Assembly: GCF_037042905.1 (NCBI RefSeq)
Contig: NC_087249.1
Coordinates: forward strand, 3,534,001 to 3,598,000
Direction: 5' to 3'
Source: Lytechinus pictus
Taxonomy: Eukaryota
Length of the DNA: 64,000 nt
Shown here: positions 30,901 through 60,748 of the stretch, in pieces
Layout of the letters: every line of letters starts with the position of its first letter
Numbering within the stretch: the stretch's first letter is position 1
Notes under the pieces: generated by a model
Seen by the model: the letters and a program-made list of their open reading frames with translations, nothing else
Told to the model about the DNA's origin: nothing
Databases searched by the model: none
Program-made: the position numbers and the translations under genes

Positions 30901-33900
30901 TGAGAAACAGATCAAGGTATGACATGCATTTTCTGGAAATTCTTAAGGACAAAGACATGGAATAAGATCATCTTCTCGCATTTCGCTTGAACTAATATCG
31001 TCGTTACGTGTACCTATATTAATGAATACAACCATCTCAACTTCTCTTTTTATTTTTCGCATATTATCAGTCTCAAAGGAAAATTTACATTTTTCTTCTT
31101 TCAATGTAGGATATCCAAACCAGAGAGTTTAAGAAAGATGAATACATCTTGACCTTAGAGAAAGATTTGGCAACTCTCAATCAGAAGATGGACTTGGATT
31201 CACCCTCTGAAGTAGGTGTTAAGGCATCAATAATGATGATGATTAATAATGAATATGGTGTTGGTTTGAATAATGACAATACAAAATTCTCCCCCCCATC
31301 CTACTAATTTATACCCAGTTCTTTTGTGTCGGGAAAATCAATTTAAAAAAGTCATTTGGAAAAAAATTACAAGCAAAGTTTAATCAGCTTTTAGTACAAA
31401 ATGTTAGGTAATATTATAAAGAACACAAAAAAAGATGATTACAACTATTGCATTAATATTTTTAGTGTAAACCAAAGACAAAAAAAGAAGGTTTCAAAAA
31501 TAAGTGTTCGGACATCNNNNNNNNNNNNNNNNNNNNNNNNNNNNNNNNNNNNNNNNNNNNNNNNNNNNNNNNNNNNNNNNNNNNNNNNNNNNNNNNNNNN
31601 NNNNNNNNNNNNNNNNNNNNNNNNNNNNNNNNNNNNNNNNNNNNNNNNNNNNNNNNNNNNNNNNNNNNNNNNNNNNNNNNNNNNNNNNNNNNNNNNNNNN
31701 NNNNNNNNNNNNNNNNNNNNNNNNNNNNNNNNNNNNNNNNNNNNNNNNNNNNNNNNNNNNNNNNNNNNNNNNNNNNNNNNNNNNNNNNNNNNNNNNNNNN
31801 NNNNNNNNNNNNNNNNNNNNNNNNNNNNNNNNNNNNNNNNNNNNNNNNNNNNNNNNNNNNNNNNNNNNNNNNNNNNNNNNNNNNNNNNNNNNNNNNNNNN
31901 NNNNNNNNNNNNNNNNNNNNNNNNNNNNNNNNNNNNNNNNNNNNNNNNNNNNNNNNNNNNNNNNNNNNNNNNNNNNNNNNNNNNNNNNNNNNNNNNNNNN
32001 NNNNNNNNNNNNNNNNNNNNNNNNNNNNNNNNNNNNNNNNNNNNNNNNNNNNNNNNNNNNNNNNNNNNNNNNNNNNNNNNNNNNNNNNNNNNNNNNNNNN
32101 NNNNNNNNNNNNNNNNNNNNNNNNNNNNNNNNNNNNNNNNNNNNNNNNNNNNNNNNNNNNNNNNNNNNNNNNNNNNNNNNNNNNNNNNNNNNNNNNNNNN
32201 NNNNNNNNNNNNNNNNNNNNNNNNNNNNNNNNNNNNNNNNNNNNNNNNNNNNNNNNNNNNNNNNNNNNNNNNNNNNNNNNNNNNNNNNNNNNNNNNNNNN
32301 NNNNNNNNNNNNNNNNNNNNNNNNNNNNNNNNNNNNNNNNNNNNNNNNNNNNNTATTATTCAATACGATTAGTAATGAAAATAAGAAAATAATAATAACT
32401 GTAATAATAAAATGGAGGAGATGATGATAATGATGCTTATCAATGACACTGGCGATAGTGATGCTGTTGCTACTGCTTCTGATGACGATGATAATGATGA
32501 CAATGATGGTGATAATAATTTTAAGATAAAATCCTGCCTTAAATCCTTAGGATGACTTCAGGACATCGAAGGCTAACCAGAATGCCCTGAAGCTGCAAAA
32601 GAAAGCATTTGACCAAGAACTTAAGGTAAATATATGTACAATGCGATACAATACAATACAATACAATACAATATAATGACCTCAATCCTTATAAATTGCA
32701 TCTACGCCTATGATTATTTGAACTTGTTGAGGAAGGTTTGTTATAATTAATTACATTTGCTCCAGTGTGTTCACAGGAAATAGCCTGAAACCTTTTACCT
32801 GACATATTGGCGTTCATGGGGACTTGGGGCCATGGCTCCACCGAAAAAAAAACTTTCACGAGAAAAGAAAAGGGAAATAGTGGAACATCATTCTATTTTT
32901 TTAATATTATGTCAAAACCTATCCTAAAATTACATTTTCGTACTAATTTTTTTTGGCTTCATTACCAAACTGACCCGATAGATATATCACTTCTTTTTAC
33001 CCCTCTTCAGAATATTCGTTCTAATGGACAGGAAAGAGATTACTATGTCTTGAAGTTGGAGCAGGATATTGAAAACATGCAGAAAGAGAAAGATGAGCTC
33101 TATCAAGAGATACAGGCAAGGCGTTTTTTGTATCATAAATCAAAAGTACATGATACAATATGTAAGTTTACTAGATATAAATTACAAAAGTGAGCAAAGC
33201 AAATTGCACAGTAAAACACGAACAATTAATTTAGCTGATATCGGCGTCCCATGAGGTGGTGGGGCAAGGCGGCGACCGCTCCCAATGACTATTAAAGTAG
33301 TGAAAAAAGGATGAGAAATGGAAGAAAGAAGAAGGAAGAGTACAAAAACAGAGTTATGGCCATGTAACTAAACAATATCCCTATATGATCTACAGGAGAA
33401 AATATGACGTCACCTTAAGGCTGTCTTGCCCCGCTATCAAATTATCGTGGCGCCGCTGAATGCAGCAATGCCAAAAAGCATATGAGCCAAAAAGAATGTC
33501 AATGATATACTCATGATACTAGTCATTTGTTTTCCAGAACTCGTTTTGGAAAGAACCCAAGATCAACGATCTCGAGGATAAACTGAATCAAGACATTGAA
33601 GACCTGAAGGAACAGAAGATAGAACTGGAGCTAAAGTTAAAGGTATTCAGATCTTGGTGGGAAAAAAGATGAATGGACAATGCATCTGGTTAAAGAAAAG
33701 TTAAAACCCTGAATTTCAGGATGTGAAAAAATAAATGATTTACTATAGTTTACAGAAAATTATATAAACATGGTCATAACAGAAATAATTGCAGTGAAGA
33801 AACTAACGACAGTAGTAGTGTAGTAGAAGTAGTAGTTTTGGTAGTAGTTATATTGGTAGTAGTAGTATTAGTTGTAAGAAGTAGTAGAAGTAGTTGTAGT

Positions 33901-36900
33901 AGTTTTGGTAGTAGTTGTAGTAGTAGTAGTAGTAGCAGCAGAAGTAGTAGAAGTAGTAGTAGTAGAAGTAGCAGTAGTATTAGTTGAAGTAATAGAAGAA
34001 AAAAGAAGAAGAAGGAGAAGGAATATAAATAGAAATAGTAATACATGTGTAAGAAGGTAGATTGTAGTATTAAAATGTTTTCCTCTCTGTTTAATTGATT
34101 GTTGAAAATTGTTTGAATTATCCCCCCCAAAAAAAAAAAAAAAAATCGAAGCTTTGTATACACGAGTTACAAGTGTTAAGAAAAAAAAAGAAAAAAAAAT
34201 CCTCATCTTTCAACTTCCTTCCAACTTTATACATCAATATAGGACGCCATATCCAGAGCAGATCAAGAACTATATGAATCGAATTCAAAGGTTTCTGAAG
34301 TACAGGCTCAAAAGATCGAACTGGGCTCAAAACTCAAGGTAAATTGTCTAGGGATATTTACAATTAAGCTATCAAATTATATTTGTTATTGAAGTACAAT
34401 AATTCAACTTGATAGTCATTATAGTTTGTACATATAGGTTTATGTTTTATAACCATTTACTATATAGTTTTATATATCTCATTAACCTATATAACCATTG
34501 TTTATTCTTCCGGAATTGCTAGGAGTTAGAGAGAAAGAATGCTGAAACCACAGACCGTCTTCTTGATTTGGAAAAAGAATTCGCAGACTTAGAGAGTCAG
34601 AGGAATGAAAAGGATGAAGAAAATAAGGTTAAAAAAAACTTTGTTCATTTTTATTAATTAATTTATTATTTTTGAGGAGTCTTTAGAAAAATCTAATAAT
34701 CACTCTTATCGTTAACCTGTAAAATTTAATTACCTACCGAACTTGAGCGTATGACATACCTGAAAAAAACACGAAGTGATGGATGTAGATTACATACTCG
34801 TTTATAATTACAGCGTCTTTCTGATGAGATATCACAGCGAGATACCAATATCAAACAACTGATAGCAGAGAATCAACAGCTTCTGTCTAACTCTCAGGTA
34901 ATTCATCTTTATCTTTACTTATAGAAAGTCACTATTTTTTTTTTCATTTGTCATTCCATTTGTACTATTTAATTTTCGATGATATTTAATTGATTCGATG
35001 ATTATTTTTACTTATTTGAAAACATAAATATATATACAGAAGAAGAAGAAATGTCACATTAGTATTTTAGATCAGGAAAGCATTGAAAAGAACATTATGA
35101 ACCCATAGCCATATATTATCAATATAAATTTTAAAGGAATTGAAGGAAAGCTGTTCAACAATGAGTCAAGAAAAGGACCGCCTTGAAACTCTTGTCGCCA
35201 ACTTGACTCAGAGAACGGATTGCCTTACAACACAACTCGAAACAGCAGCCCAAGATATTCAGGTAACAAAATATCAATCAGTCCTAAGCAAACATACATA
35301 TACAATAAGCAATTACACGGCACGTTAAAATGTGCCGTGTAATTCTTAAAATTCTAAGACATTTTTCCAACTTTCTTTTAGTTGCCACTTCAAGACCTTA
35401 GAAAATATATTTGATATAGACCTACATTTATATATATAAAAACAGGTGTAAAATGTCAAATCCCAATCTATACACACAAATTAAAAATCTGACTAAAGAC
35501 ATTGTATTTTTTGAAGGAATTTAAGGATCAGTCTCTATCCATTATTGAAGAGGGAAAGATACATCAGACTAATGCCCAACAATTAAGCGAGGAAAACTCA
35601 TATCTCTCAAAACAAGTTGACGAATTAAAGAAAAAGTGCAAGGTATGTACCAATGGAAAATATAATCATTAAAAAATGATAATTGATGAATCAGAAAATT
35701 AAAAAATAGACAGATATGATAATATATTAAACAGCATACATGTACACCGTTAAATTGATTAGTGAATGAAAGAATTAATAAATCAGCAACTTTAGCAATA
35801 AATACATTGTTCAGTTATTGCCATAACATGATTACAGAAATAGCATAAAATAAATCTCCGACACAAATGCTATAGTACTAAAAAGAAATTATTAAAGTTA
35901 TGATTAAACGTTTATTTACCTCTTAAATAAACGTAAAATTCAAAGAGATGGGTAATGTTTCTCTTTTGGATGTCACTTTATAGGAAGAAGTAAAACACAA
36001 TTTTTCAACATTTTTTTAAATTTCTGTATCTCGTATGCAGCTTGTTGTCCTTAGTTTTTTTTCTCTACTTTCTTTTTTTGTCAACCTCCCTTTCCTCTGC
36101 TCCTCCTTATTCATATTCTCCCCTCTTTTTTAATGAAAGGAATTGGAAGAGAGGCTTTTTGAAAGAGAAGAAAAGGACCAGCATCAGAATGAGGAACTTT
36201 CGATTGAAATAAAGAAAACTCAGCAACAATATCAGGTATTATTATGAAAATATTCATGATTAGAAACCACTGTATATCTTTCAGGTATTAGTTGCAATAT
36301 TTATTGTTTAGAAATCAACACTTTGAATGGTCACTAAACTACTCTAAAATTAATTTTAAACTAATAATCCCATTGGGAGCTTAAGCTGTAATTAAGTTAC
36401 GTTTTGTTTAGAATAAAGTTATAGAAAGCAGCCTGCGTCAGGTGCCCATTCATACATGATAGTGCCGTTCTTGGTGTGATTTAGTAAAATGTTATTTGAC
36501 TCACTGAAACTTTTGTAACTTTATAATAGAGATATTTACAACATACTCATTTTTTTAGGACTTGAAGGAGAGATTCCAATCTAAGATTGATGAGGTGACG
36601 AAAACTCGCAAAGAATTAACGGAGAGATCAGCTAAAGAAAAGCGTGACGTACTCACTGAACTTTCAGAAGCTCGAAAACAACTGGAGGTATTAACTCCAA
36701 TATTAATTTTCAGTGTCAACTGTTACAAGCTACATGTATGACAAACTGATTTAGAAAGTCAATGTAAGATGAACCTTATTTCATTGATCACTGCGATTAA
36801 GATAATTTCCATGCATTGATATTATTTGATTTCTACTTTATCTTTTTTATTTGGTAAAAGTGGTAAAGATCATAAGGATTCCAAACTATAACACGATACG

Positions 36901-39900
36901 ACACAAAGGTAAATGACCGTCATCACCATCACCACCATCACCATCACCATCACCACCATCACCACCACCAAAACAACAACAATAAACAGCAAACCTGTCA
37001 AGTTAAGACGACGAATGTAATGTTGCATACAACCGCCACACATTATCCCTTGTTCTTTCCCCTCTCGGTCATCTTCTCTTACTTCGTTACTATAGATACA
37101 AATTCTTTTTAATATTAAGCATCTCTCTTCTTACCCAAGCCTGTCTTCCATCCCTAAATTTGTTTTCAAAATTGAAACTTATCGACAGGCATTCCAAGAG
37201 AAATCTAAACGTTTCCAGAAAATGAGCGACGATTTGGGAGAGAAGAATTACAGCTTATCGACTGAAATCGCAACTGCTATAACAGACAACAAGGTAAATA
37301 TTGAATTAATCATGTTAATGATAAAATTATAGTAGAGCATAATTATTGTATTGTTCATATATGTATTAGCTACTTATTATTTTCTATAAACTATAGTCAT
37401 TCCATGAAGGGGAATTTCAATAGTCGTCTTTCCAAAATGAAAAAGAAAAGAAAGGAGAGAGAAAACAAAATATAGTCCGAACAACGTTTGTCTTGTTCTA
37501 TTAATTAAAATAAGGCTTTTGTTAAAATGGTATTCTCATTACATTTTAAGTTTTATCCTGATATTGTTACTTCATGGATACAGTTGCCATTTTTTTTTGT
37601 AGCCAATGAAGCACACTGTTTTCTGTAATGCATGTTATACCTCTTTGAACCTAGTATGTGTTTGAAAAATCCTAGGTGGATGAATGAGATCTCCGACTTA
37701 TCTGTTTGAAATTATTCACTTGCTTGTTCCGACAGGCACTGAAGGATGAATTGAAGACATCTAAAGATAATAGCGAGAAGGCAATCAAAATTCTGAAGGA
37801 GAAAAATGACGCAATTTTGTCTGAACTCGCTGCTGTTAACGAGAAGTGCAAGGTAGAACATTGCGTATTTTGGATTGAAACAAAAAGCTGAATATCTTTG
37901 AATCCAAATCATAAACATAACAGTTTAGTTAAATGATGATAATCTTTGCTTCGCGGAAATAAGTAATAAGGAATTCTCAGCTTAAATAACTGATGATAAT
38001 TCCCGGGTAAATACTTTGCTATACAAGTCAATGCTTATACCATTAGTATTCAGTCTGAAATCGTGGCATTTTATCTACTTCTCCTGTATCTGCATGTTTC
38101 GAATATCATCCTTACGTAAAAACTACAATAACGATGGAAACATCCATAGAATAGAAATTGTATATAACGTTGACTGAATTATTTGAGAGCTCAGTTCATA
38201 TCAAAACACAGACATCTAAAACAAAGTGTATTCAGATGCATGTATTTTGATTGAGTTTACCCCTGTATGCATATCGATAACAAGTTACTGAAGGATAAAG
38301 GTTTATACTCAAAGTCGTATCATACTATTGTTACCGGGGTGACTTTCGAGCAAACTGGGCTGCTAAGTATATAAATTCCACCTTTTCCAATAGAATCATT
38401 TTATATTATTTATCCTCGCGAACAGGACCTACAGGAGAATGTTGATGATTTACAGGAAGAAAATAAGAACTTGGTTCAGGAAACAATTGCATCACAGGGA
38501 GGAAAGAATAAAGAGGTATATGACGAGCTGATAAAGACCTACCAAGAATGCAAGGTAAATAGATTGGTTTTGTCTAAAACGAAACAGTGCAATCAGAAAC
38601 ATGTGGGGGTTGTCATGGTTAATCCAAACCACAGAACAACATTACAAACGATTCCTTATGTAAACGAATGAAATCCTGAATAAAACCGGTATTATTTTGG
38701 AAATAGAAATAAAAGCAACAAAGAAATCTGATCCTGGTGAACATTAAGAATAGTATTAGTAAGCTTCTCATTACTAAATGACTAATGCCAATGCTGATTT
38801 AAATCAGTGTTGAATATTGAATATCTTTAGTTATTTGACACTGATAGGAGAAATTATCCTTGTTCCTTTTGATTTCCCTTTTTCCAGGAAAGGGGTGAAG
38901 AGTTGGAAAGAGAAAGGGAGGAGTTCCAGGAAAACGTTGCTAAATGGGAGAAAGAAAAGGCCAATTTCTTGAAGCAGCTTGAAGCACGACAAATTGACAG
39001 CAAGGTAATTGATATTGACGATTTTGCAAGTTCCAAATTAATTGTAGCACGACTCTCCAATTTTTTTGATGTCCAATATCATATTTTTAAGAAAATCACT
39101 ACATTTATCTAACTGGGAAGGTAAATCTATCGAGTGATTTCCCGTCTAAATCAACCTGAAAATATAGCCGTCGCGTCAGTATAAGGGGAAATTTCATACA
39201 TTGTAATGACAATTTGAGAAATAATTTACCCACTGCAGTACTATACTCAAAATGATGATTCCAATGATTCTCTTTCGGAGCATTGTTTCCTGAAGTAAAT
39301 CCAATCAAACGGTAAATTGAAAATTTAATCAGATTATTTTCTAATAGCCACTTTGGAAAAAGTATAGGTTTATAAGCATGGTAACCGAGAAAATACGTAA
39401 AGGAATGTAAACTTTTACTTATATACAGGACAGCAATATCAGCAGCCCGAAGATTTCAGGCACCTCGGCTAAACTTCATGAGAGAATTACAGACCTTCAG
39501 AAAGAAAAATTAGATCTTGAAGAAAAACTACAGACTTCAGCTAAGGAGCTCAGGGTAAGTGACAATAAAATCTTAATCATCCTGGTAAAAAGTTCTGGAT
39601 AAAACACGAAATATCTTAATCTTATAAAGTATGCATTCGAAACTTGTGTTATTTTAAAGTGCCTATAACAGATGACAACTTTATTTTTTTGAAAACATGT
39701 TTCATATAACAAAAAAAAAAAGAGATGATGACTTCTTAAAAAAACCTTATATTTCTCTCCTATCTTCTCCCCCTTGATCAATTTTGTTATTTTCTAACAC
39801 CCCTTTCTCCTGTCCCATCATTAGCATCCTTATGTTTATAGTTAATATGATATGTGACTAGACCTAAGTTAAATATGGCCTCTGGATGGAATGATTATTT

Positions 39901-42900
39901 TCTCCTTTCTGATTCAACTACCCCCCCCCCTTTCTCCTTCAATATTCTTTTAGGCATTGGAAGGAGATCTCAATTCCGTAAAGACAGAAAGCGAAAAGCG
40001 AGTTTCAGAGTTACAGGAAGAAAATGATTTTATGATTTGTGAAATTGCATCTCTTCGCGACCTTTGCGTTGTAAGTAGCAAATAATTTTCCTGATATTCT
40101 ATTTATACACCATTTTTAATTTAAAAAAATGTTATCTCATTTATCTATCCAAAGAAGCTCTTTTGAGCCAATTTACAGGTATAGAAATCACGCCTTACAA
40201 TATTCTTATATTTATGATGTTTGTCCCCTCTCTCCCTAAGTGATGAAAATATTAACTAATTTATTCGCTGTTAGTGGAATTTAAGAAAGAAAAACACCAA
40301 ATACAATCAAAGTTGACCACACTGTATTCAGCAAGAGTAATTTAACAGCTCAATAAAAATTTCTTTAAAATGAATATAGCGAGAAAAAGAAAGAAACCTG
40401 AATAATATTATCGCTGATGCTAATAACAGCGCTTCGTTTATTTAGATAAAACGTTCGAGAAAAATGCCCTTAACAAAACTTTGGAACACTCATCTTTCAG
40501 GAATCGGAAGAGTCGATGGAATCTATGGCAGAAAGGAATGACCAACTGAAGCGAGTTTTGAGTCTTACCCAGGAAGAAAAAGACGATGATCTCTTGCATG
40601 AATTGGAGAAAAGTTTTCTACGATGCCAGGTGAAAAAGAACAAAAAGGAACATTTCAGATGAAAAAAATACTTGCATGAGTTTCATCATATTTAAAAGGG
40701 GTGTCAATGTGATATTAATACGAAGTTTTAATAAATGTAGCAAAATGACAACGGATAATAGGAGCGTTCTAGCATCATGAATCATCGTATTTTGTCGTAT
40801 GAGAATTTTTCACATCTTACTAATTTCTCTGAATTTTACATTAGGTGAGAAGCACAGATGTCTGACTTTTATTATAGTGATTGTTGAATGGCTGATTGAA
40901 ACATCCAACAAGTCCTTTCATGAAACAAAAACAAAAACACTCCCCATGCAAGTCATTTTCAGCTTCCACACAATAGTCATATTTAATAGACATATGGATC
41001 GATTAATGATTGACACGTTTCCCCTTTTCTGTTATTAAAATTAATGACTGATTAAAAGAGATGAAAATAATTAAAAATTTATATTTTTAAGGCATCTGAA
41101 GAATTATTCTTATAGAACTAATCTATATATATCTTTTTTTTCTTTCAGGATCTGGAAGATACATTGAAGCATGTGCAACTGGAATCGAAAGAAGCATCGA
41201 ATGTATGGAATCAAGAAAAGAAATGTCTCGTAGATCAACTCCAAGACCTACAACTTTCACCTAAGGTACGACAATCCACTGATATTCGTTACCACAAAGT
41301 AAAGTTTATTTACTTTTATGAGCATTTGTCTTTCTATCAAACAGTAGATTCAAGGTTGGTATCTGCTCCACAATCTTCCACCGACTTCCATTATTTTATT
41401 AAGAGTCCAAGACTTGTTGAGTAGGAAGCTTTCCCCTGATACCCCTTAGCACAGGCAGGTCTTTCAGAATGTTAGGACTCTCCCCTTGCCCGCTAGCTTT
41501 TCTCTCCAGTCCTGTAATTTAGATATTGATGTGTTGGGCAGCTTGGGCTTCATGTCCAAAGGTTCTATTGCTAATCAAAATATAAGCTCCTGAAACCAAC
41601 GTTGTCATGGTTGTGTTGGTCATGTAAGGTGATCCACAATTTGAAGTAAATAAGAAAGATTTTGTAATCAGTTATTTACCAGGATGAAGGTACCGTCTAA
41701 TAAGCAGTACATTCACATGTTTTAGGAGATGGGTTCCAGACCGGTTCAGGATTTAGGAGCTACCAACATGTTTCAAGAACAAATCTCTCAGTTCCAACAA
41801 GATAGGGAAGGATTAAAGGAAAAACTTCGAGAAGCAGAGAAAGAAAGCGCGGTAAAATTATTACCTTATTGTAATTTAGACATACTAAAGTAACACTAAC
41901 ATCATACAGTGTACTTTTAAACAAGTTTAACATAATGATTCTCTATAGTTTTCTGAAGAAATTTTGATAGGTTTAACGAATATATTGAATAACTCTTTGA
42001 AATCATAAATTTCAAGGCATCGCCGATGTGCGAATAATTAAAGAATTTAATGAACTATGTTTGTAGCATTCAACTTATTTTAGAGATTTTTAAACTCTAA
42101 CATCACTAACGTACACGAAGACTTTTAATTACTGCTTGATATTAAATTAATAAAAATGGTTATCACTTTACTTATCACTTAGGAACTTCGAGAGGAGTCG
42201 GCCTTTGAGATCCAAGAGCTACGTGAAACCTCTTGCAAATTGGAAAAAGAAAATACCGATCTCTTTAAAAGTCTTGGGCGCTGTCAAACCGAATGCAAGG
42301 TATGAGCTATTTTATTTATACTGTATTTATCTACGATAAGATGCAGTCTCGATTTACACTTTATTTATATACCATTCTTTTAAAAGCAAATTTTATGTAT
42401 AAATATCTTTTTATACAGGACCAAGATAAAAAAACAGTATCCTGATCTTTTTATCCTGTTTAAATATATGGGAACAAAAAAATAAAATAAACATAGAGAT
42501 GCTACATTAATCAAGACAATAGCTCACTTACAAATGTACCGATAATAAATCAATAGCAATGATATCGATAATCAGGATAATTCTAATTTTCAAGAGAAGA
42601 TCTATTTCATTATTTTGATTAAAATATTTATATCTATTTTATTCTGTTTCGTGTATGTGATATTTACATTGGTACACGATGCTCGTATACCCATCTGCAT
42701 AGTATTATATTAATTCCTAAGCTGAAAATGGTTGAATTAATTTGAATTCCAAGACAAATGTGTCATTTTCAGGAGGCCAAATCTAGGGCAGACGAGATGC
42801 ACGCTGCTACTGTAGAGCTTCAGGAAGAGATCGGAAAACTTCAAAATGAAAGGAAAGAGCTGAATGAAATACTGCAGAATTCTTCCCGAAAGCAGGAGGT

Positions 42901-45900
42901 AAAATATATGGAACAAATAAATATGATCTCATGAAGAATTATATAATTACAATAATGCAAACGAAATTATTTTTTTTTCAGAATATGCTACTCACTGATC
43001 CTGTGAAAACCGGAGAACACCATCTCACCGATGATTAATGCCTAACAACAGTTATACCTTTCAAGTGAAACAATAATAATAATGAAATAATTTGTCTTGT
43101 GAATTTGTCCTGGTAAGAAGGGATATAAGTGCAAACTTCAAAATATAGTCTTTCTTGGTCAACATGATCAATTTAAATGTCTATATCATTTTTCTGCCTT
43201 AACGTGTTTAGGAAGGATACTTGGATAGAAATAATCTAGATACTTCTTATTTGTTTGAAATACCTTAGAAAATTTGACTTTCTTCTATTTGTTTCAGAAC
43301 TTAACCAAACTCCAAGATGAATCATCGAAGTTGGAGAAGGAGAAATCAAACCTCACCAAGCAACTGGAGAGTCGCCAGCTTGTGTGCCAGGTGTGTGTGC
43401 CATTGGCAATTCATTCCAATTCCAAGTGATTGGTCTTTATTCATGCAGAGCACCCCAAAAAATCCTCCACATTTTCTTATGAAAAAAGGACGAATTGTAT
43501 AAAATTACACGACCGGGCCTTTCCTTTATATTCACACTCATACTACTTTGTCTTTCTTTAATAATAATTTCCCCCTTTTTATCGTAACTTGGAAAATATG
43601 GGGAGGCTCGTAACACCTGTCTATCTAAGCTGTACCCTTCCAGGTTTGGGCTATATAAAAGTTACAGATGAAGAGGCAGTTTCTAATTACGGATAGAAGA
43701 AATAACCTTGTTCTTTACATTCAGAGAACAATATTTTTTTTTAGCAAGATATAAATTTGTGTTTGACAGCAATTCGAAGAATATCTGGCCGCAGCGACCG
43801 AAGAAAGTGAGAGACACATGGAACTAGCTATGAAGCTGAAGGCAGAAAATGAAGATCTTTCCCGACAACTCACCAAGACTCAAAACCAGAAGGTATCAAA
43901 GCAGGAGACAAAAATCAATTTGATTATTAGCGATTTCATTGAATTGCGTTTGATGGTCATTTACACAATTTCTTACATTAAATTCGTGCCTTTAATTCCA
44001 GAGGGGACGGGACTGTGAACAAGTGGACCGCTTGTTATAATGATCGAAGCTTTTAAAATCCCAGTACAACGTTTTTTTTATATCATTATATTTCAATTTT
44101 TATTGTATTGTATTTTTATGGAGTTTGTAAACTGTTCTGTTGGAAATTAGAAAAAAAATAAAACTGAAACTGAACTGAAACCAGATTTCGCAATTACTAA
44201 CAACGATAAAAAGTCAGCCACTTATAACTTTATTATGATAAGTCAAGCCTTTTATAACAATTAAACATTAATTGAATCAAACAAAACCTTTATAATAATG
44301 GCATCAACTTTTTAAACTGATTTTAGGAATCAAGCTCATTTCAGGCAGTGACTCCTAAAACAGTTAAACGCACTGGCCAACAAGTCGAGGAGCTTCAAAA
44401 TGTCAAAAAGGGACTTGAGCAGAAACTCAGCAAGGCCGAAGACGAAAGCTCGGTAAGATTAAGTTGACATACCAGAGCTTATATTTCTATTCCCAGAAAA
44501 GACAAAATAAGATAGCTGTAATTAGTGTCATTTTCTAAAAGCAGGATATGATAAAGAAAGTCAAAACTCAACAATCTGGACCCCTTCCCCGTCAAATGGA
44601 TCGTTCCCCAATTTGCCATACCCAGAAATGTTGAAATCAGAAACAATTTGTTTCTAACATTGAATTCTTATAACCATGTATATTTATTACTTGATGTGAA
44701 TTTATTTCCATTCAAATGTGAACGACATATAAATTTTAACATATTAATAACAACAAATTCAGGAAATAATTAATGCAATAGAATGTCTTTGAATTAAGTC
44801 ATTGAATAAAATTACAAATTACGTCGAATCGAATCCGTTCGTAATTTCTAAGATGTACAAAATATACGTGTTTGGTTACCAAATCTTAATTTTCCTGCAA
44901 ATCACAATTAGCAACTGGTCATGAAAAATCAAATCATCGGTACCAGAGTGAAGGACTTGGAGAAGTTGGTGAAAGAGACTGTGGACAAAAACATCAAGCT
45001 TGAACATGAAATAAAGGTAATCAAGTTTGTTCGATTATTTAACTCCAAGAGTGGGGATTCTGCATGCCTGCTTTAAAAATGAGGTTACAGAAACCATTTG
45101 GAACTTTAGAAAACAAGAAATGAGACAAAATGCTTGGGCCTAGTAATAATGAGCAGAAACCTGTGGTCTTGTCATCTGACTACTCCATCCTCTTTCCTAC
45201 CGTCGCGTTATCAAAATTCTCTTCTATCACTTCGTCAGACCTCAAAGAATAGGAACACCAATTCGTATTGTAAGCTCTAAATGATGTTCAGTGGTGCTAA
45301 AAAGTTAGTAAACCCTACCGGAAAATGAACACATATACAGTCCATGTCTTTATGTGATATTGTTGAGTCAGGGAGCGAGGCTGTGTGTCGTGGGTGTGTG
45401 TCGATGATAAGAAAATGATGAAACAAAATTACCCCCCCCAAAAAAAAAAATTACAAAAAAGGTAAACTCAATTAAAAAAGAATATTAGTAACTCAAACAC
45501 ACAATTCATAAAATTCCCATCTCACATTGCAGAAAGCTACTTCCAAACCTGCTCAGTCGCAATGTGTCATCGAAGATCTTACTAAGAAAATGGACGAGCT
45601 TGAGAGAGAAAGGGAAAAACTGACAGAAAGGCTTCAAACTGCTGATATTGAAAGCAAGGTAAATAGTGATATGGAAAAAAAGAAGAAACAGGGGAAGAAA
45701 TACATAATAGAAATAAATTGATGGTCTCACAACATGATCAAGTTTGAATAAGTTTTTATCATGAACAGCATTGGAATGTATGAAGCAAGATGTGCAGTAG
45801 CAGACATCGGTGGAGAAAACTTGATATTAAGAACTATAGATGACTAATACAGTTTCAGGGTGCCGGATGTCGATACTTTTTTCTCATGAATATGAGACGT

Positions 45901-48900
45901 ATTCAGTCATGACTTTCTAGCTCTCAGGTGGTAAATCTGTCACAGAAGTAGGCTTTAATTTCCAGAGAAAATCATTTTGAATATGTTTCCACGTTAGGAT
46001 TTAACTGATAAAACCGAGGCAGCCTTGGAAAAGACGAGAGAAATGGAAGAGCTAAAGAATGAGGTGGAATTAAAGAACAAGAAACTGGAGTTCGATGTCA
46101 CGGTTGGATCTTACCTAGAATAGTTGAATATTTGATATTTGATACATACTGTCATTTCTCACTAGCATTATCCTCTTTTCCATTCATATTTCCAATTTCT
46201 AAATTTTTGCTTATTACCCTATTCTTAATTCATTTTTCAAATTCTTATACTCACCTTTCCCAACCACTGCGTTTTGTTTCGAAACAAAAAACAGCATTTT
46301 TACAATGGTTTGCATTGTTTTCATTGCGTCATATTATTACGGTTTGATAAAGAAACAAATAAATAAATCAAGTTTAAAGAATTGTTCAACAGAGCTAGCA
46401 TAGTAATTCAAAAAGAATAGAAATGCTACATTATTAGAAATAATTTATCTTATCAAGCTATTCTGATTGCCTACATTTATTCAGTTTACGAAGAACAAAG
46501 TAGAGACTGCATTCTCAATGGTCGATGATTACAAGAAAGATGTCGCCGATATGAAGGTCCATAACAGAGGTCTCAAAAATCAGGTGGATTTCCAGAAAAA
46601 TAAAGTTCAGGTGAGATGTAACTTGATACAACTTTGTTAAGATTAGTCTAGTCATGATATTTACTCGAGTTCCTTAAACACAGAAAATTATTACATATTC
46701 TTGACTGAAAATTTTCTTGTCGTTTTCTTAATATGTTGACTACATCCTGCAGGATCTTGAAGGTCAAGTGTCTAAGCTGAAGGAACAAAGTGCCTCGCTG
46801 GAAAAGAAACTGGAAGACGCAGAGCAAAGGGTAAAATACACGGAAGACCTTAAGGATAAAGAGATGGACTACCTTAAGGAGAAAGGGATGAACGACCTTA
46901 AGGAGAAAGAAACCGAAATTAAGAAAGTGAGATACCAACTCGAGGCAAAGACGGTAAAGTTTGATGCGATGGAGAAAGAGAAGAATAATCTGCAAGGGAA
47001 GGTCTCTGAGATGAGGAAGCTAAAGGAGGTACTGGAAGTAAAAGTAGCAAAGGCCGAGACAAGAGAGAAAGGGGTGGAGGATGAAATGGAGGTAAGTATG
47101 CCTTTAAAATGCTTGTATGGTTCTAAGAAGTTCGTTCTTGAGATAATGTGTCATATCAAACGCTGATCAGGGCATATCTTGTCAGAATCCAAGACCAGGG
47201 GCTCTCATGGGTTGAACCATGCTGAACTTCGGACCCATTCTTCTTGAAGTTGCATTTCTCGTGTAAGTTGATTTTGTCTATGTCCCCCGCCCGTCTTCCC
47301 CACTAGCGAGAGTAATACTGTATCGGCCTTCTTTAGGTTCATGATACGTCCTCCCTGCAAACCCTTTGAAATAATCTTTTTATCAGTTCATTGAAAAATT
47401 AGTTGCAAATATGTTTATCTCTTTATTTATTTCACACTATTATACTATAGGCTATGAAAGCTGCTCTGAACACGGCAGCTGTTGAGTATGGTCTGCTTAC
47501 TAATGTCGGGGATACACTCACAATCACAGACTTGTGCCAGTCACTTGATGGCATGAGGCAACTCAATGCACATATGAAACTCGAGATGATCGACTTGGAG
47601 CAGGCTAAAGCCAATCTTGAAGAAATGGTAAGTGAAATATGTAGAGTTAAAATAAAAAAATATATACCATGAATGCGTCGATTATGATAGTATGTCAGCA
47701 GTCAAACCATTAAATTGACAACCAAAGGTAGCAAAAGCTTAAATGAAACAGAATTTGAGAAATCGAGAGGCATACATGGGTAAAAGAAATTTGGTTCCGA
47801 CACTGAGAAATAGCCATAGAATCCATCCTCCCACAGTGGAGCGAAATAAAATTCTTCGACCTTTTATTAACGTAATGCTTTTTATTCTTTTATAATATTA
47901 ATCTATTTCTTTTTTAATGAAAATATATATATATAAAACAAAATAAATGTATATCATACTAATCTTGTTTTACTTCATACAGTTGAAGACGAGTGATGCT
48001 TATTTCAAGAGTGGGGATTCTGTTGACGAAAAAAGGTAAATCGTTTATACTGTTAATTTATTGATACTAGATAAATAATAATAGTCAAACCATTAAGTAA
48101 AAGCTCAGATATAAATACTTGCTGCAACACGCACCATCGTGAATAATACTAAGCTCAGATATTTTGTTAAGTGTTTGATTTGCGTGTTTGCGTGTTGCAG
48201 CAAGTATTTAAAACTCAGATATAAATACTTGCTGCAACACGCACCATCGTGAATAATAGAAGCTCAGAGATTTTGTTAAGTGTTTGATTTGTCGTCGCTA
48301 ATTGTTGGCAAAGGGTCATAAGATCGTGAAAGTTGAAAGATGAATCAAATCAGGTGAAATCGTCAGTTAATCCTAATCCAGTGCTTCTCAACCTTTTTTT
48401 TACTCGAGGAATCTAAGAGTTTTTTCGAGGCCGACCTACTAAAATAAAAAAAAGGATATGACTACTTGTCTCGACTCAAAAATTGTCTCGACAATTATAA
48501 AGAGCATATTAGTGCGTAACTTTATGATCTTCTGCTGCAGTGACTGAGCCAAAAATTGAGGGGGTTTGATACGACAGTTTTATTACAAAAATCCAAGTTT
48601 GTGATAGATTTTGACACAATATTAAAAAGATAATATCATATTTCACCCTTATCCCTTTTCTTTCCTTTCCTCTTTTTTTTTCTTGGTCATGAAATATTTG
48701 GGGCCAAGAGCCACCCCCCCCTTATCTGTATGCAAAAGACTTTTCAATAGTAGATTTGTTTCCTCCCTCACCCTTTCGCTTTAAAACACGGTCCATTTTG
48801 ATGAAAGTATGTTTCATGAAAATTTTCCCCCTATTTATTTTTCTTCTCTGGAGCTTCTCGCGGCCCACCGGTTGAGAAGCGCTGTCCTAAATCATACCTG

Positions 48901-50394
48901 CTGTATTGGTTATCATAAAACATAATAAAAACTCAGTAAAGAGGTTTTAAAAATCCAAAACAACCCCTTAATATCCCGTTTTCATTAATACTAAGATCTT
49001 ATTCATGTCTAAATTGCAGCATCGGAGCGCGTGAAAGGACTGAACTGAAGGAGACAATAAAAGATCTTCGATTCCAGGCTTACAAACAGGAGCATCTCAT
49101 CAAGAAACTCAGATATGAAGTCTCAGAGTGAGCACTATACATCACAAATATTCTATGGATAAGTACCTTTAATCACTGAAGACTCCACGTTATTGCCATT
49201 TTTTCCAAGATAAAAGTATAGCTTGACCTACTAAACATGTGTTTTCTTTGGGTAACGCGTACCAAGTGTATGTGCCAAACAGTTTTGATAGGGTCTTTCA
49301 CGAAATATGATAAATGACATAATTTGGCGCGAAGCGTAATCATTCTACCTTTTAATCCCGTTTTTCCCACCAATTTTTACCTGTAATGTATACTTTCATC
49401 AAGCATTTTCATTCCCTTTCTCCACTTATGCGTTTTTAGATTTCACGATTTCATATTGAAAAAGCAGGACACGAAGTTTAGCGACATGCCTTATGTCGAC
49501 AGAGCAGTGGTCATGCGTATTTACTCCGATGTCGAACTCAAATCCATCGATGCTGCTGACCTCTCCTTCTTACCTAAAGCCCAGGATGATGACGACGAGG
49601 ATGAGATCGGGAAAGGTGCTTTCGGGAAGGTGTTCTTGAGGCAATACAAAGGCCAGGCCGTCGCCGTCAAGGTTCCGTATATAAGCGAACGGGTGAATGA
49701 TGAGGATGCTACGAAGCGGATGATGCGAATCAAAGCAAACCATGCTCGTACCACCATGGAAGCTTTAGTTCACCTTGCACTTGCTGACCATCCATCTTTC
49801 CCAAAGACAATCGGTGTCGTTGACATTGATGGGGCCCCTTCACTCGTTCTGGAGTTCCTCGGCGACAAGGAAACAGGTGACGTCTTTTCCCTTAGCCAGG
49901 CCATCAAACATCCCAGCCCTTCACTAAGGCAGAAAGACTGGTTTGGTATCATCACGGACATCGTCAACGGAATGAAGGCAATGCATGCTAAAGGTCTCCT
50001 CCACAACGATCTAAAACCCAACAACGTTCTTTTGCAGTGGGACTACAATGATAAAAGATGGCATGCTTTCATCATTGATATGGGCAAAGTGTCCACCCAG
50101 ACCGTACCTCTCAAACATCGTCACATGCCTGACGATGACCGCGAGCAGTACAAAGAAGGCTCCATGTTTCAGCATCTAGCTCCAGAATATATGTTGGACC
50201 AGCAACCCATGTCTGTTCAAACTGACATCTTCTCTATGGGAAAGATAATTGGTCGGATCGAGGGAAAAGTGATGAACAATCGGATCTTGAGAGAGTTAGT
50301 CGCTGAGATGACGAATGTTAAACCACGTCTTCGACCATTATGGAAGGACATTGAGAAGGCAGTCGCAAAAGCTCGGAAGAAGTGTCTGTCATGA
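24954..50394 (+). CDS. Giant coiled-coil protein with C-terminal Ser/Thr-type (non-RD) protein kinase domain, ~43 coding exons, ~1,940 aa
   Basis: Exons in one continuous frame: 24954-25001, 26755-26895, 27376-27516, 28110-28181, 28603-28725, 29187-29246, 29522-29626, 30048-30152, 30812-30916, 31110-31211, [gap], 32551-32625, 33011-33115, 33538-33642, 34243-34338, 34523-34627, 34814-34897, 35137-35262, 35517-35642, 36140-36235, 36559-36687, 37189-37293, 37736-37852, 38426-38554, 38888-39004, 39429-39554, 39954-40070, 40501-40629, 41149-41265, 41726-41851, 42183-42299, 42773-42898, 43298-43390, 43770-43892, 44327-44452, 44912-45016, 45533-45658, 45998-46102, 46485-46610, 46753-47091, 47451-47627, 47983-48035, 49020-49127, 49440-50394. 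The peptides are E/K/L/Q-rich with heptad periodicity, and splice phases are consistent through to the kinase exon. Confidence 0.85.
26289..26515. mobile_element. Short MITE-like repeat (CAGGGGCGGATCCAGG family)
   Basis: Starts CAGGGGCGGATCCAGGATTTT and ends in a degenerate inverted CCTGGATAAGTGTCC. A related copy lies at about 28780-28998 (CAGGCGTGGATCC...GGATCTGCTCCTG). Confidence 0.55.
31517..32353. other. Assembly gap (837 N)
   Basis: Run of N inside the coiled-coil kinase gene; it may hide one or more exons. Confidence 1.
33811..33995. repeat. (AGT)n imperfect microsatellite
   Basis: AGTAGTAGT array in an intron; it explains the poly-L and poly-T ORFs in the ORF track. Confidence 0.9.
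48101..48291. repeat. Local direct duplication with an intervening inverted segment
   Basis: An ~80-bp unit (CTCAGATATAAATACTTGCTGCAACACGCACC...GTGTTTGATTTG) occurs twice. The spacer TGCGTGTTGCAGCAAGTATTTA is the reverse complement of the unit's start. Confidence 0.85.
48379..48884. mobile_element. hAT/Charlie-like MITE
   Basis: TIRs CAGTGCTTCTCAACC / GGTTGAGAAGCGCTG; near-identical 8-bp flanks TCCTAATC / TCCTAAAT(C). Confidence 0.8.
49440..50394 (+). CDS. Intronless terminal exon encoding the protein kinase domain of the coiled-coil gene
   Basis: Contains GKGAFGKV (Gly loop), VAVK, the alphaC Glu (MEA), HNDLKPNN (catalytic loop), DMG, HLAPE and DIFSMG. The acceptor TTTTTAG|A at 49439/49440 is phase 2 and compatible with the upstream exon. 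Confidence 0.93.
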
Positions 50395-59100: not shown

Positions 59101-59617
59101 TTCAGGGACATCCTGAAGATGTACCTGTAATATAATGTATAAGGTTTTTTGGACAGACAACCATCTATGTATGAAGGCTATCCTTGTATAGGTCCAATTT
59201 GCTTTGTACTTTTTCCCTTTCTGTATTTTTCTCTAAAGCGCCTTCAGCATCTAAATAAGATTGAAAGTGCGCTTTACAAATTCTATGTATTATTATTATT
59301 ATCATCATCTCCCCAGTACCTTATTTCACTTATCAAAAGTTATACCCCTTCAAGATCTTTACGTTCCTCCTTTTCCAATTCTCTTGTTACCCCCAAAATT
59401 TCCAAAACCTGGGGTGAAAGATCATTTGTTTACTCATCCTCTAAGCTATGGAATAGCCTCCCTCAAAACATCAAACAATGCTTGACTTCTGAAACTTTTA
59501 AACATTACCTCAAAACATTTCTGTTCAATTCTTCTTAATTTCTTTTATAATTTCCTAAAAAGCGCCTTGAGCAATCTACAGAGTGGATTTGGCGCGATAT
59601 AAGTCTAATTATTATTA

Positions 59618-59691
<74 letters not shown>

Positions 59692-60717: not shown

Positions 60718-60748
<31 letters not shown>

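What the first reader, a model, noticed from the sequence alone, without database searches (positions are those of the whole stretch)
47983..50394. Chimeric gene: an intronless non-RD kinase spliced onto a ~1,600-aa multi-exon coiled coil
Seen: 42 small exons are followed by one 955-nt exon holding the whole kinase domain. It is joined through the gene's only phase-2 introns (48035/49020 and 49127/49440). The kinase has HND in place of HRD and DMG in place of DFG, but keeps the Lys, Glu, Asp, Asn and APE residues, so it looks active. Established: known coiled-coil kinases such as ROCK, MRCK and citron have N-terminal, intron-split AGC kinases, and non-RD kinases are enriched among innate-immune kinases. 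Inference: a lineage-specific fusion in which a retroposed or mobile-element-borne kinase was captured by a structural coiled-coil gene, giving a long tethered kinase.
Basis: partly seen in the sequence, partly recalled or inferred. Interest (0 to 1): 0.75.

Follow-up and report, generated by a model that had tools for sequence, protein, structure and literature searches.

The report
Conserved sea-urchin coiled-coil non-RD kinase gene
This is a real sea-urchin gene that puts a RIPK1/IRAK-like protein kinase at the end of a very long coiled-coil rod, but it is not a recent chimera: the layout is shared by a large, unstudied echinoderm gene family.

Summary
Window 49440-50394(+) is one 955-nt exon encoding a complete kinase domain with HND and DMG and all catalytic residues. 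It is joined to upstream coiled-coil exons through two phase-2 introns (48035/49020, 49127/49440), as in a RefSeq Lytechinus pictus model (P0158). A transcript contig also links these exons to coiled-coil exons further upstream. My exon-chaining model gives 40-46 small phase-0 exons and about 1,600 residues before the kinase.

The origin story fails. At least 36 paralogous kinase domains in this genome all sit in uninterrupted reading frames. The phase-2 intron before the kinase exon is at the same codon in five paralogs and in the Diadema setosum ortholog. The Diadema locus is colinear from the first N-terminal repeat exon to the kinase. A paralog 8.6 Mb away models with about 1,200 pre-kinase residues (a rough estimate) and the same last four exons. 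HN is invariant in 41 family members from urchins, a sea star, a crinoid and a sea anemone.

So this is an ordinary member of an unnamed family: 47-aa repeats, dimeric rod, then a non-RD tyrosine-kinase-like (TKL) kinase. RefSeq models cover it only in pieces. The scan also noted a paralog with this architecture elsewhere in the genome (s1-311700).

The parts
24861..25001 (+). First of three 141-nt exons, each encoding one 47-aa N-terminal repeat. It is preceded by an in-frame tag/acceptor, so a short ATG exon must lie upstream; I did not find it.
   Evidence: Exon chaining. 58.7% identical over 46 aa to Diadema L016:1039-1176. An HMM of the repeat hits paralog kinases P0151/P0018 (1.6e-11), P0152 and P0006, and paralog exons at C5:12.13 Mb (1e-17). 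No Pfam match.
26755..26895 (+). Second 47-aa repeat exon.
27376..27516 (+). Third 47-aa repeat exon.
28603..46610 (+). About 35 small phase-0 exons (mostly 105, 117, 126 or 129 nt) encoding the heptad-rich rod. The exon 43770 ends at 43892. Exon 46485-46610 is missing from the X1 contig, and 41726-41851 and 44912-45016 are missing from P0200, so these may be cassette exons. Six weak exons are doubtful: 28110, 29187, 29318, 30334, 30526 and 33310.
   Evidence: Exon chaining. P0200 maps at 93-100% to the exons between 41149 and 47091 except 41726, 44912 and 45533; its first 33 and residues 273-314 gave no reported hit but read as exons 40501 and 45533. X1 contig. 43.7% of residues lie in heptad-pattern windows, against 1.4% in shuffles. 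Exons of the same size class align in register. Homologous exons occur in the paralog and in Diadema.
31517..32353 (.). Run of 837 N inside the gene. It may hide exons and was left untouched.
46753..47091 (+). 339-nt coiled-coil exon shared by both RefSeq models (P0200 and P0158). Predicted to form a parallel in-register homodimer.
   Evidence: complex prediction on P0200:390-504 x2 scored 0.46 against a best control of 0.00, with i-to-i contacts in a heptad pattern.
47168..47212 (+). Alternative terminal mini-exon (GISCQNPRPGALMG*) used only by RefSeq model P0200. It would give a kinase-less isoform.
   Evidence: No read coverage in the four runs laid. Reads and the contig splice 47091 to 47451 instead.
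47451..47627 (+). 177-nt exon (AMKAALNTAAVEYGLL...). Several RefSeq models of relatives begin at the Met here.
   Evidence: Homologous exons in Diadema (L016:9986-10153) and in the paralog.
47983..48035 (+). 53-nt exon that shifts the phase from 0 to 2.
   Evidence: The paralog has a 62-nt exon with the same phases.
48340..48900 (.). High-copy dispersed repeat inside the 985-nt intron. A 110-nt tandem/palindromic element lies at 48100-48291. This is ordinary intronic repeat DNA, not a carrier of the kinase.
   Evidence: 2,937 first-look candidates in the genome, spread over many contigs; none of the 101 matches lies at a kinase paralog locus. Repeats. RNA reads pile up here with loose ends on both sides.
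49020..49127 (+). 108-nt exon, phase 2 to 2 (IGARERTELKETIKDLRFQAYKQEHLIKKLRYEVS). It is the last coiled-coil segment.
   Evidence: Conserved in P0159 (S. purpuratus), P0001 (Diadema) and the paralogs.
49440..50394 (+). 955-nt terminal exon holding a conserved VDRAVV lead-in and a complete TKL-type non-RD kinase domain. Key positions: G-loop 49609-49632, Lys 49669-49671, HND 50002-50010, DMG 50077-50085, APE 50179-50187, stop 50392-50394.

Best explanation
Window ~24.86-50.4 kb (+) is one gene of Lytechinus pictus. It belongs to an old, expanded and unnamed echinoderm family.

The encoded protein has about 1,900 residues and three parts:
- Three 47-aa N-terminal repeats of unknown fold.
- A heptad-rich alpha-helical rod of about 1,400 aa, built from about 35 small phase-0 exons.
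- A C-terminal tyrosine-kinase-like (TKL) kinase, always encoded by one large terminal exon. Its nearest solved relatives are RIPK1 and IRAK4.

The kinase carries HND instead of HRD and DMG instead of DFG. RIPK1 itself has HKD and DLG. All catalytic residues are retained, so it is most likely an active non-RD kinase.

Inferred mechanism: the rod forms a parallel in-register homodimer. This holds two kinase domains side by side at one end, ready for trans-autophosphorylation or proximity-driven signalling. The N-terminal repeats at the far end act as the targeting or binding module. By standard coiled-coil geometry (about 0.15 nm per residue) the two ends would be about 200 nm apart.

The single-exon kinase, the two phase-2 introns and the coil-kinase junction are inherited family features, not a recent fusion. 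What varies between lineages is rod length: about 750 aa in Diadema, about 1,200 aa in a paralog and about 1,600 aa here.

Shown: the gene structure, its conservation and the intact catalytic motifs. Inferred: dimerisation, kinase activity and any biological role. A role in stress or innate-immune signalling is a guess.
For: - Kinase ORF and Pfam match.
- Closest PDB sequence is RIPK1 at 4e-13, whose alignment shows HKD and DLG. The family profile scores RIPK1 at 8e-25 and IRAK4 at 2e-24.
- RefSeq P0158 joins the last five exons exactly. P0200 covers exons 40501-47091. The X1 contig bridges exons specific to each model.
- The exon-chaining model has 40-46 phase-0 exons and 1,600 pre-kinase residues.
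- Heptad signal: 43.7% of residues against 1.4% in shuffles.
- Dimer prediction: 0.46 against a best control of 0.00; this mark was reached by 21 of 30 solved homodimers and 0 of 23 solved monomers; parallel and in register.
- 36 paralogous kinase domains in uninterrupted frames.
- Same intron position and phase in L002-L006 and in Diadema.
- One-exon kinase in the Diadema, Antedon and Asterias genes.
- Diadema locus colinear over the whole gene, with about 750 pre-kinase residues.
- Paralog with about 1,200 pre-kinase residues and an identical 3' exon structure.
- N-terminal repeat HMM hits annotated paralog kinases and paralog loci.
- In 41 family members G, K, E, H, N, K, N, D, G and PE are invariant and the D of HND is present in at least 90%.
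- Tree: the window groups with S. purpuratus P0159/P0160 (100/100) and is sister to a paralog clade present in both genera. Diadema branches outside both, but those nodes are not starred (87/85, 90/87).
- AF2 model: pLDDT 82.5, confident kinase fold and long pre-kinase helices.
Against: - No transcript evidence links exons upstream of 40501 to the kinase. The first exon was not found.
- An 837-N gap lies inside the gene.
- RNA depth in the three raw-read runs was near zero. The 49127/49440 joint was not seen directly in reads.
- The RefSeq models found are a kinase-less coil model with its own terminal exon (P0200) and a short kinase model (P0158, listed only under nr, so perhaps from another annotation). 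Short isoforms may therefore be the main products.
- No ortholog of the middle coil was found in other species within 285-906 aa.
- Kinase activity, dimerisation and function are untested.
- The dimer score comes from a model that can recall coiled coils from memory.
Confidence: 0.82

Rival explanations
1. One reading: a lineage-specific chimera. An intronless kinase, retroposed or carried by a mobile element, landed downstream of a structural coiled-coil gene and was captured by splicing.
For: The kinase domain is in one exon, while the rest of the gene has more than 40 small exons. The two introns next to it are the only phase-2 introns. A dispersed repeat lies in the adjacent intron. GC3 of the kinase exon is 0.55 against 0.46 for the coil exons.
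Against: The same intron position and phase occur in five paralogs and in Diadema. The same last four exons sit on a pre-kinase region modelled at about 1,200 aa in a paralog. Diadema is colinear over the whole gene. All 36 paralog kinase domains are single-exon, so no multi-exon parent exists. The residues across the junction are conserved. No poly-A tract follows the stop in the sequence read. I did not look for target-site duplications. The intronic repeat is generic, and none of its listed matches lies at a kinase paralog locus.
Confidence: 0.03
2. An ancient capture. The one-exon kinase cassette was joined to a coiled-coil gene once, at the base of the family (before echinoderm classes split, possibly before the cnidarian-bilaterian split), by retroposition or exon shuffling. 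Every member inherited it. This concerns origin only and is compatible with the best explanation.
For: The kinase is in one exon in urchins, a crinoid and a sea star. In the sea-anemone relative the last exon starts at the kinase domain. The coil exons are phase-0 symmetric, while the kinase is attached through phase-2 introns.
Against: There is no parent gene, no element remnants and no outgroup that lacks the fusion. In Asterias the single exon also holds 500 pre-kinase residues, and more distant paralogs start the exon at the Gly loop. Intron loss or gain explains the pattern equally well.
Confidence: 0.2
3. Two or more separate products, as the RefSeq models found here have it. One is a kinase-less coiled-coil protein ending at 47212. 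The other is a short kinase of about 430-505 aa from an internal start near 46864-47454. The ~1,900-aa protein would be rare or absent.
For: RefSeq models P0200 (518 aa, own terminal exon 47168-47212) and P0158 (505 aa). RefSeq models of the Diadema ortholog and of a paralog also begin at the Met of the exon homologous to 47451.
Against: The X1 contig joins P0200-only exons (45533, 45998) to P0158-only exons (47451, 47983, 49020). Reads splice 47091 to 47451 and none cover 47168-47212. Both RefSeq models start at Mets inside exons whose reading frame and splice sites continue upstream. In Diadema the upstream exons continue in frame beyond the annotated Met. Full-length relatives carrying both repeats and kinase are annotated (P0151, P0006).
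Confidence: 0.15
4. The kinase domain is a catalytically dead scaffold, a pseudokinase like MLKL or KSR, held on a rod.
For: HND and DMG depart from the canonical HRD and DFG. KSR2 is among the sequence hits.
Against: The glycine loop, VAIK Lys, alpha-C Glu, catalytic Asp and Asn, DxG Asp and APE are all present. All but the catalytic Asp are invariant across 41 members; that Asp is present in at least 90%. The active kinase RIPK1 has HKD and DLG.
Confidence: 0.08

Closest known systems
RIPK1 kinase domain (TKL group, RIPK family)
   Same: It is the best solved-structure sequence match to the single protein (4e-13). It is also among the top matches to the family profile (8e-25). Like this kinase it is non-RD (HKD) and has a D-L-G in place of DFG. 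The S. purpuratus ortholog is auto-named 'RIPK1-like'.
   Different: No RHIM, Death or CARD domain was found in any part scanned. A coiled-coil rod lies N-terminal to the kinase instead. IRAK4, JAK and BRAF score almost as well with the profile, so membership in the RIPK family is not established. A published RIPK survey places no invertebrate except amphioxus in RIPK1-5, and it did not include echinoderms (PMC9573974).
IRAK4 / Pelle-type kinases
   Same: The profile match (2e-24) is nearly equal to that of RIPK1. Both are TKL-group kinases activated by induced proximity in oligomeric assemblies (established knowledge).
   Different: No Death domain. From my own knowledge IRAK4 is an RD kinase, whereas this family is invariantly HN.
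ROCK / MRCK / citron (coiled-coil kinases)
   Same: A kinase attached to a very long dimeric coiled coil, so the idea of a kinase on a rod of fixed length applies.
   Different: By established knowledge those are AGC kinases at the N-terminus, with intron-split domains and PH/C1/CNH tails. Here the kinase is TKL-like, C-terminal and single-exon.
Leucine-zipper TKL kinases (MLK/DLK/ZAK)
   Same: TKL-group kinases that are thought to be activated through coiled-coil or zipper-mediated dimerisation (established knowledge; not tested here).
   Different: Their zipper is short and lies C-terminal to the kinase. They are RD kinases. No specific similarity was seen beyond the TKL fold.
Uncharacterised echinoderm and cnidarian 'HND' kinases
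   Same: Examples are RefSeq LOC129260597, LOC105443716, 'kinX-like', 'irlB-like', 'golgin A2-like' and 'CROWDED NUCLEI 3-like'. This is the actual family. Members share the HN(D)[LI]K..N motif. The annotated urchin members examined also have a C-terminal kinase after coiled-coil-like sequence, and some carry the 47-aa repeats.
   Different: This member has the longest rod seen: about 1,600 pre-kinase residues against 100-830 in annotated relatives. The RefSeq models found cover it only in pieces.

Membership tests
Eukaryotic protein kinase superfamily (Pfam PF00069) | Significant match to the Pkinase profile above the gathering score. | tested here: met
   70.9 bits against a cutoff of 31.7, E 1.5e-19. 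The AF2 model has a confident bilobal kinase fold.
Active (non-pseudo) kinase | Gly loop, VAIK Lys, alpha-C Glu, catalytic-loop Asp and Asn, DxG Asp and APE all present. | tested here: met
   All are present in the window. All are invariant in 41 relatives except the catalytic Asp, which is present in at least 90%. Enzymatic activity itself cannot be tested with these tools.
Non-RD kinases | No Arg before the catalytic Asp in the HxD motif. | tested here: met
   HND at 50002-50010. H and N are invariant across the family.
RIPK family (RIPK1-5) | The kinase domain groups specifically with RIPKs rather than with other TKL kinases. | tested here: inconclusive
   RIPK1 is the best hit for the single sequence. 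With the family profile JAK, RIPK1, IRAK4 and BRAF are within three orders of magnitude. Foldseek gives LIMK1, Eph, TNNI3K and BRAF. I built no tree with human TKL kinases.
RIPK family (RIPK1-5) | An accessory RHIM, Death, CARD or ankyrin domain. | tested here: not met
   No such Pfam match in the kinase exon, P0158, P0200 or ten individual upstream exons.
ROCK/MRCK/citron coiled-coil kinases | N-terminal AGC-type kinase followed by a coiled coil and PH/C1/CNH domains. | tested here: not met
   The kinase is C-terminal and its best matches are TKL/TK-like. No AGC kinase was among the top hits and no PH/C1/CNH domain was found.
Recent retrogene or element-borne insertion | An intronless copy with a multi-exon parent elsewhere, a poly-A remnant or target-site duplications, and absence from orthologous loci of relatives. 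| tested here: not met
   All 36 paralog domains are single-exon, so no parent exists. The exon is present with the same intron in Diadema and in paralogs. No poly-A tract follows the stop. Target-site duplications were not searched for.
Echinoderm repeat - coiled coil - HND kinase family (unnamed) | 47-aa N-terminal repeats, then a heptad rod, then a C-terminal single-exon HND kinase reached through a phase-2 intron before the F-H/Q codon. | tested here: met
   Repeat HMM. Rod. Intron position. Paralog and ortholog gene models.

The most novel reading that the evidence does not exclude
The gene belongs to an undescribed family of dimeric, rod-tethered, non-RD RIPK1/IRAK-like kinases. The family has at least 36 copies per genome, including a near-identical tandem array. 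In this reading it serves echinoderm innate-immune or stress signalling, and rod length (about 750 to 1,600 aa, varied through the number of rod exons) acts as an evolvable spacer between an N-terminal repeat 'sensor or anchor' and the kinase pair. It would be a kinase counterpart to the well-known TLR, NLR and SRCR expansions of sea urchins.
Probability: 0.2. Interest if true: 0.6.

Novelty: new variant of a known kind. Interest (0 to 1): 0.4.

Why it matters
It corrects a tempting story. The 'chimeric' look comes from one big kinase exon behind dozens of tiny coil exons. That arrangement is an inherited family trait, not a recent gene-fusion event.

It also shows a pattern in RefSeq models of the family. 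Those found for this gene, a paralog and the Diadema ortholog begin at internal Mets or, for this gene, split the locus. The true proteins are probably two to four times longer than annotated.

The family itself has no name and no literature that I could find. It combines a non-RD kinase whose nearest solved relatives are the innate-immune kinases RIPK1 and IRAK4 with a very long dimeric rod and a novel 47-aa repeat. It is strongly expanded in sea urchins. That makes it a reasonable candidate for anyone studying echinoderm signalling or immunity. It also offers a natural series of rod lengths for testing 'molecular ruler' ideas about tethered kinases.

Tried and rejected
- The look-up of encoding contigs for P0158, P0200 and P0159 found nothing on record. 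I therefore could not see RefSeq neighbours or the S. purpuratus locus.
- The search for homologous proteins with the coil model P0200 returned only itself and P0158. This says nothing about longer relatives.
- BLASTP of the N-terminal exons against family proteins gave no hits. Only the HMM built from six repeat copies did.
- My crude heptad score was too strict to be useful on the short N-termini of relatives.
- Raw RNA reads (X5-X7) were too shallow to show the 49127/49440 joint. Most reads laid belong to intronic repeats.
- Foldseek against the PDB and AFDB clusters did not separate TKL subfamilies. The ESM Atlas feature search gave one eukaryote (mostly cnidarian) cluster and then bacterial kinases, which I take as uninformative.
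- Synteny with the neighbouring Death-TIR-TIR gene (53146-64000, minus strand) is not seen within 10 kb downstream of the Diadema ortholog. Adjacency gives no support for a functional link.
- No DNA-level similarity exists between coil exons or introns, so the exon duplications are old, not recent.
- Paper searches found no description of the family. Bradham et al. 2006, the sea urchin kinome paper, is not held.
- I rejected the idea that the intronic repeat at 48340-48900 carried the kinase.
- I found no conserved first exon by tblastx against the 1 kb of Diadema sequence available upstream.

Full report
**What is at the coordinates**

Window 49441-50391(+) is an uninterrupted 317-codon frame. 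It matches Pfam Pkinase (E 1.5e-19, 70.9 bits) and PK_Tyr_Ser-Thr.
- GKGAFGKV at 49609-49632.
- The AVAVK lysine at 49669-49671.
- TMEALVHL, containing the alpha-C glutamate.
- LLHNDLKPNN, with HND at 50002-50010.
- IIDMG, with DMG at 50077-50085.
- HLAPE, with APE at 50179-50187.

The sequence shows an acceptor ...tttttag|A TTT CAC at 49440 and a donor ...TCA GA|gtgagc after 49127. The split codon is therefore GA|A, which makes a phase-2 intron.

**Is the kinase exon spliced to the coiled coil?**

The window is Lytechinus pictus. It lies on contig C5 of 57,468,504 bp, the same length as the RefSeq contig that carries P0200 and P0164.

- RefSeq protein P0158 (LOC129260597, 505 aa) is 98% identical.
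- A second RefSeq protein, P0200 ('tropomyosin-2-like', 518 aa), maps at 93-100% to most exons from 41149 to 47091, with its N-terminus reading as exon 40501. It then ends in its own mini-exon 47168-47212.
- The two models share exon 46753-47091.
- One assembled contig of run X1 joins exons found only in P0200 (45533-45658, 45998-46102) to exons found only in P0158 (47451-47627, 47983-48035, 49020-49127). Raw reads of X6 show the 47091/47451 and 47627/47983 joints.

So coil exons and kinase-proximal exons are on one transcript. The contig ends 7 nt after 49127, and raw-read depth on the kinase exon was only 0.4-2x in one run. The last joint therefore rests on RefSeq models in L. pictus, S. purpuratus (P0159) and Diadema (P0001), and on its conservation, described below.

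**The whole gene**

I built a splice-aware exon-chaining script. It scores coiled-coil-like composition, AG/GT sites and phase consistency, and is anchored on the kinase exon. It yields a chain from 24861 to 49127.

- Without six weak exons there are 40 small exons plus the kinase exon, giving 1,917 aa with 1,600 pre-kinase residues. With the weak exons there are 46 small exons.
- All introns are phase 0 except 48035/49020 and 49127/49440.
- Exon sizes cluster at 105, 117, 126 and 129 nt.
- Pre-kinase composition is E 14.6%, K 12.8%, L 11.6%, P 0.7% and G 2.2%.
- 43.7% of residues lie in 28-residue windows with a strong heptad pattern, against 1.4% after shuffling.
- Pfam gives only sub-threshold generic coiled-coil hits.
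- Two copies of the 113-aa exon product are predicted to form a parallel in-register dimer. The score was 0.46 against a best control of 0.00. That mark was reached by 21 of 30 solved homodimers and 0 of 23 solved monomers. The three runs agreed in at least 95% of contacts and the partner's pLDDT was 86. Contacts are i-to-i in a 3-4 pattern.
- The AF2 model of P0158 (pLDDT 82.5, pTM 0.67) shows long helices at residues 2-88, 101-143 and 152-197 and a confident kinase domain.

The first three exons of the chain are each 141 nt and encode three copies of a 47-aa repeat. The first of them is preceded by an in-frame stop within the acceptor. A short ATG exon must therefore lie upstream, but I did not find it. 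An 837-N gap (31517-32353) lies inside the gene and was left alone.

**Testing the 'chimera' idea**

*1. Paralogs in the same genome.* Thirty-six matches at E <= 1e-10 all sit in uninterrupted open frames of 253-585 aa, most of them 314-371. A single-exon kinase is thus the family rule, and there is no multi-exon parent.

*2. Intron position.* In paralogs L002-L006 (39-65% identity) and in the Diadema setosum gene, the acceptor sits one base before the same F-H/Q codon, giving a phase-2 intron.

*3. Gene models of relatives.*
- Diadema P0001 has exons of 54, 19, 37 and 322 aa, matching 59, 18, 36 and 318 aa here.
- The crinoid Antedon P0022 has its kinase in a 339-aa last exon.
- The sea star Asterias P0028 has 754 aa in one exon.

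*4. Junction residues.* The residues across the junction are conserved in relatives at 33-51% identity: LRF..Y.QE..IKKLRY..S | FH.., then VDRAV.

*5. Colinearity with Diadema.* The 10 kb upstream of the annotated Diadema gene holds, in order, homologues of the three repeat exons, of exons 29522 and 30812 and further coil exons. The end of the 339-nt exon, the 177-nt and 108-nt exons and the kinase follow. The same chaining script gives roughly 750 pre-kinase residues there.

*6. A long-rod paralog.* The paralog at C5:12.14 Mb has two of the repeat exons (E 1e-17). It also has about 30 phase-0 coil exons, several visibly homologous to exons here, about 1,200 pre-kinase residues by a rough model, and the same final exons of 177, 62, 108 nt and kinase, with the same two phase-2 introns.

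*7. The repeat in annotated proteins.* The repeat HMM hits annotated proteins that end in the kinase. These are P0151/P0018 (L. pictus, 1,143 and 1,118 aa; three copies), P0152 and P0006. It also hits, weakly, the distant paralog at C5:51.03 Mb that another first-stage note (s1-311700) described as 'repeat + coiled-coil stalk fused to an intronless non-RD kinase'.

*8. Kinase tree.* The window groups with S. purpuratus P0159/P0160 (100/100). This clade is sister to a paralog clade present in both Lytechinus and Strongylocentrotus. Diadema P0001 branches outside both, with weaker support (87/85 and 90/87).

The gene and its architecture therefore predate the camarodont urchins, and the family predates the split of echinoderm classes.

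*9. The nearby repeat.* The only element-like DNA near the kinase exon is a dispersed repeat at 48340-48900 with thousands of genomic candidates. None of its listed matches lies at a kinase paralog locus. There is also a small tandem/palindromic element at 48100-48291.

I conclude that the origin story is refuted at the level of this gene and lineage. A single ancient capture at the base of the family cannot be excluded.

**What kind of kinase**

Across 41 family members the following positions are invariant, in P0158 numbering: G247, K265, E295, H376, N377, K380, N383, D401, G403, P436, E437 and D450. D378 is present in at least 90%. Among the 150 best library representatives the HN[DG][LIVM]K..N motif dominates.

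Named members come from Lytechinus, Strongylocentrotus, Diadema, Asterias, Antedon and the sea anemone Actinostola. The nearest ESM Atlas cluster is mostly cnidarian.

- By sequence the closest solved structure is RIPK1 (4e-13). The alignment shows that RIPK1 has HKD and DLG, so both 'oddities' here have a precedent in an active kinase.
- With the family profile, JAK, RIPK1 (8e-25), IRAK4 (2e-24), a plant lectin receptor kinase and BRAF are close together.
- By structure the top hits are LIMK1, EphA3, TNNI3K, FES and BRAF.

The domain is therefore TKL-like and nearest to RIPK1 and IRAK4, without demonstrable membership in either family. No RHIM, Death or CARD domain is present.

**How it most likely works**

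This section is inference. The rod dimerises in parallel and in register. That places two kinase domains together at the C-terminal end, and the six 47-aa repeats (three per chain) at the other end. The kinase has the full catalytic set. Being non-RD, it probably does not depend on activation-loop phosphorylation in the usual way (general knowledge about non-RD kinases). Its activity would then be governed by proximity, localisation or partner binding.

A role in immune or stress signalling is suggested only by three indirect points:
- The kinship with RIPK1 and IRAK4.
- The copy-number expansion, including a tandem array of at least 11 units that are 99.9-100% identical.
- The fairly fast divergence of the kinase domain (82% identity to the S. 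purpuratus ortholog).

The Death-TIR-TIR neighbour of this gene is not found within 10 kb downstream of the Diadema ortholog.

**Annotation and isoforms**

The RefSeq models found cover the gene only in pieces: a kinase-less coil model and a short kinase model, each starting at an internal Met. Relatives (P0164, P0001) are likewise truncated at the exon homologous to 47451. Real short isoforms may exist. The evidence here favours splicing from 47091 to 47451 over the P0200 terminal exon. Three symmetric exons are skipped in one source or another and may be cassette exons: 41726-41851, 44912-45016 and 46485-46610.

**Novelty and verdict**

The gene is a typical, if extreme, member of an unnamed family. 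I found no literature on that family. A RIPK survey omits echinoderms (PMC9573974), kinome papers give only counts (PMC4883820), and the 2006 sea-urchin kinome paper is not held.

I rate it a new variant of a known kind (coiled-coil-tethered kinases; TKL non-RD kinases), with moderate interest.

Noticed in passing
G000:C7:28966769-29009091 (loci L008-L012): A tandem array of at least 11 units of about 4.0-4.3 kb, 99.9-100% identical to each other. Each carries a 337-aa open frame with an HND kinase domain 40% identical to the one here. It is either a very recent amplification or an assembly artefact.
   Followed up: partly
window 24861-25001, 26755-26895, 27376-27516: Three 141-nt exons encode a 47-aa repeat with the approximate pattern ..VLL.......G......P............. 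followed by a basic helix. It has no Pfam match. It recurs in Diadema, in a paralog at C5:12.13 Mb and, in three or four copies, in annotated paralog kinases P0151, P0018, P0152 and P0006. It looks like an unnamed domain.
   Followed up: partly
window 47168-47212: RefSeq 'tropomyosin-2-like' (P0200) ends in a 45-nt terminal exon after a 76-nt intron. That would give a kinase-less isoform. None of the four runs laid had reads there.
   Followed up: partly
window 41726-41851, 44912-45016, 46485-46610: These are symmetric (phase 0-0) coil exons. Each is absent from one source (P0200 or the X1 contig) but conserved in frame. 46485-46610 has a clear homologue in the paralog. They are likely cassette exons that vary rod length.
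   Followed up: partly
window 48340-48900 and 45197-45590: RNA-seq reads pile up at 15-30x with loose ends on both sides. One joint links 45452 and 48611 on opposite strands. 48340-48900 is a dispersed repeat with thousands of genomic candidates. The reads probably come from other copies.
   Followed up: partly
window 48100-48291: A 110-nt unit is duplicated in tandem at 95-98% identity, with internal 27-30-nt inverted repeats. It looks like a small MITE-like or hairpin element in the intron.
   Followed up: no
window 31517-32353: A run of 837 N lies inside the gene between exons 31110-31211 and 32551-32625. The exon count across it is unknown.
   Followed up: no
L016:1-10000 (Diadema setosum, upstream of XP_072174352.1) and G000:C5:12123000-12142821: RefSeq models of the Diadema ortholog (429 aa) and of the L. 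pictus paralog (431 aa) start at an internal Met. In-frame, well-spliced repeat and coil exons continue for 9-16 kb upstream. Under-annotation recurs in the three loci examined.
   Followed up: yes
window 33739-34057: A low-complexity stretch is open in two frames, reading as V/L-rich and S/R-rich runs. It lies in an intron of the gene model and looks like a microsatellite-type repeat, not coding sequence.
   Followed up: no
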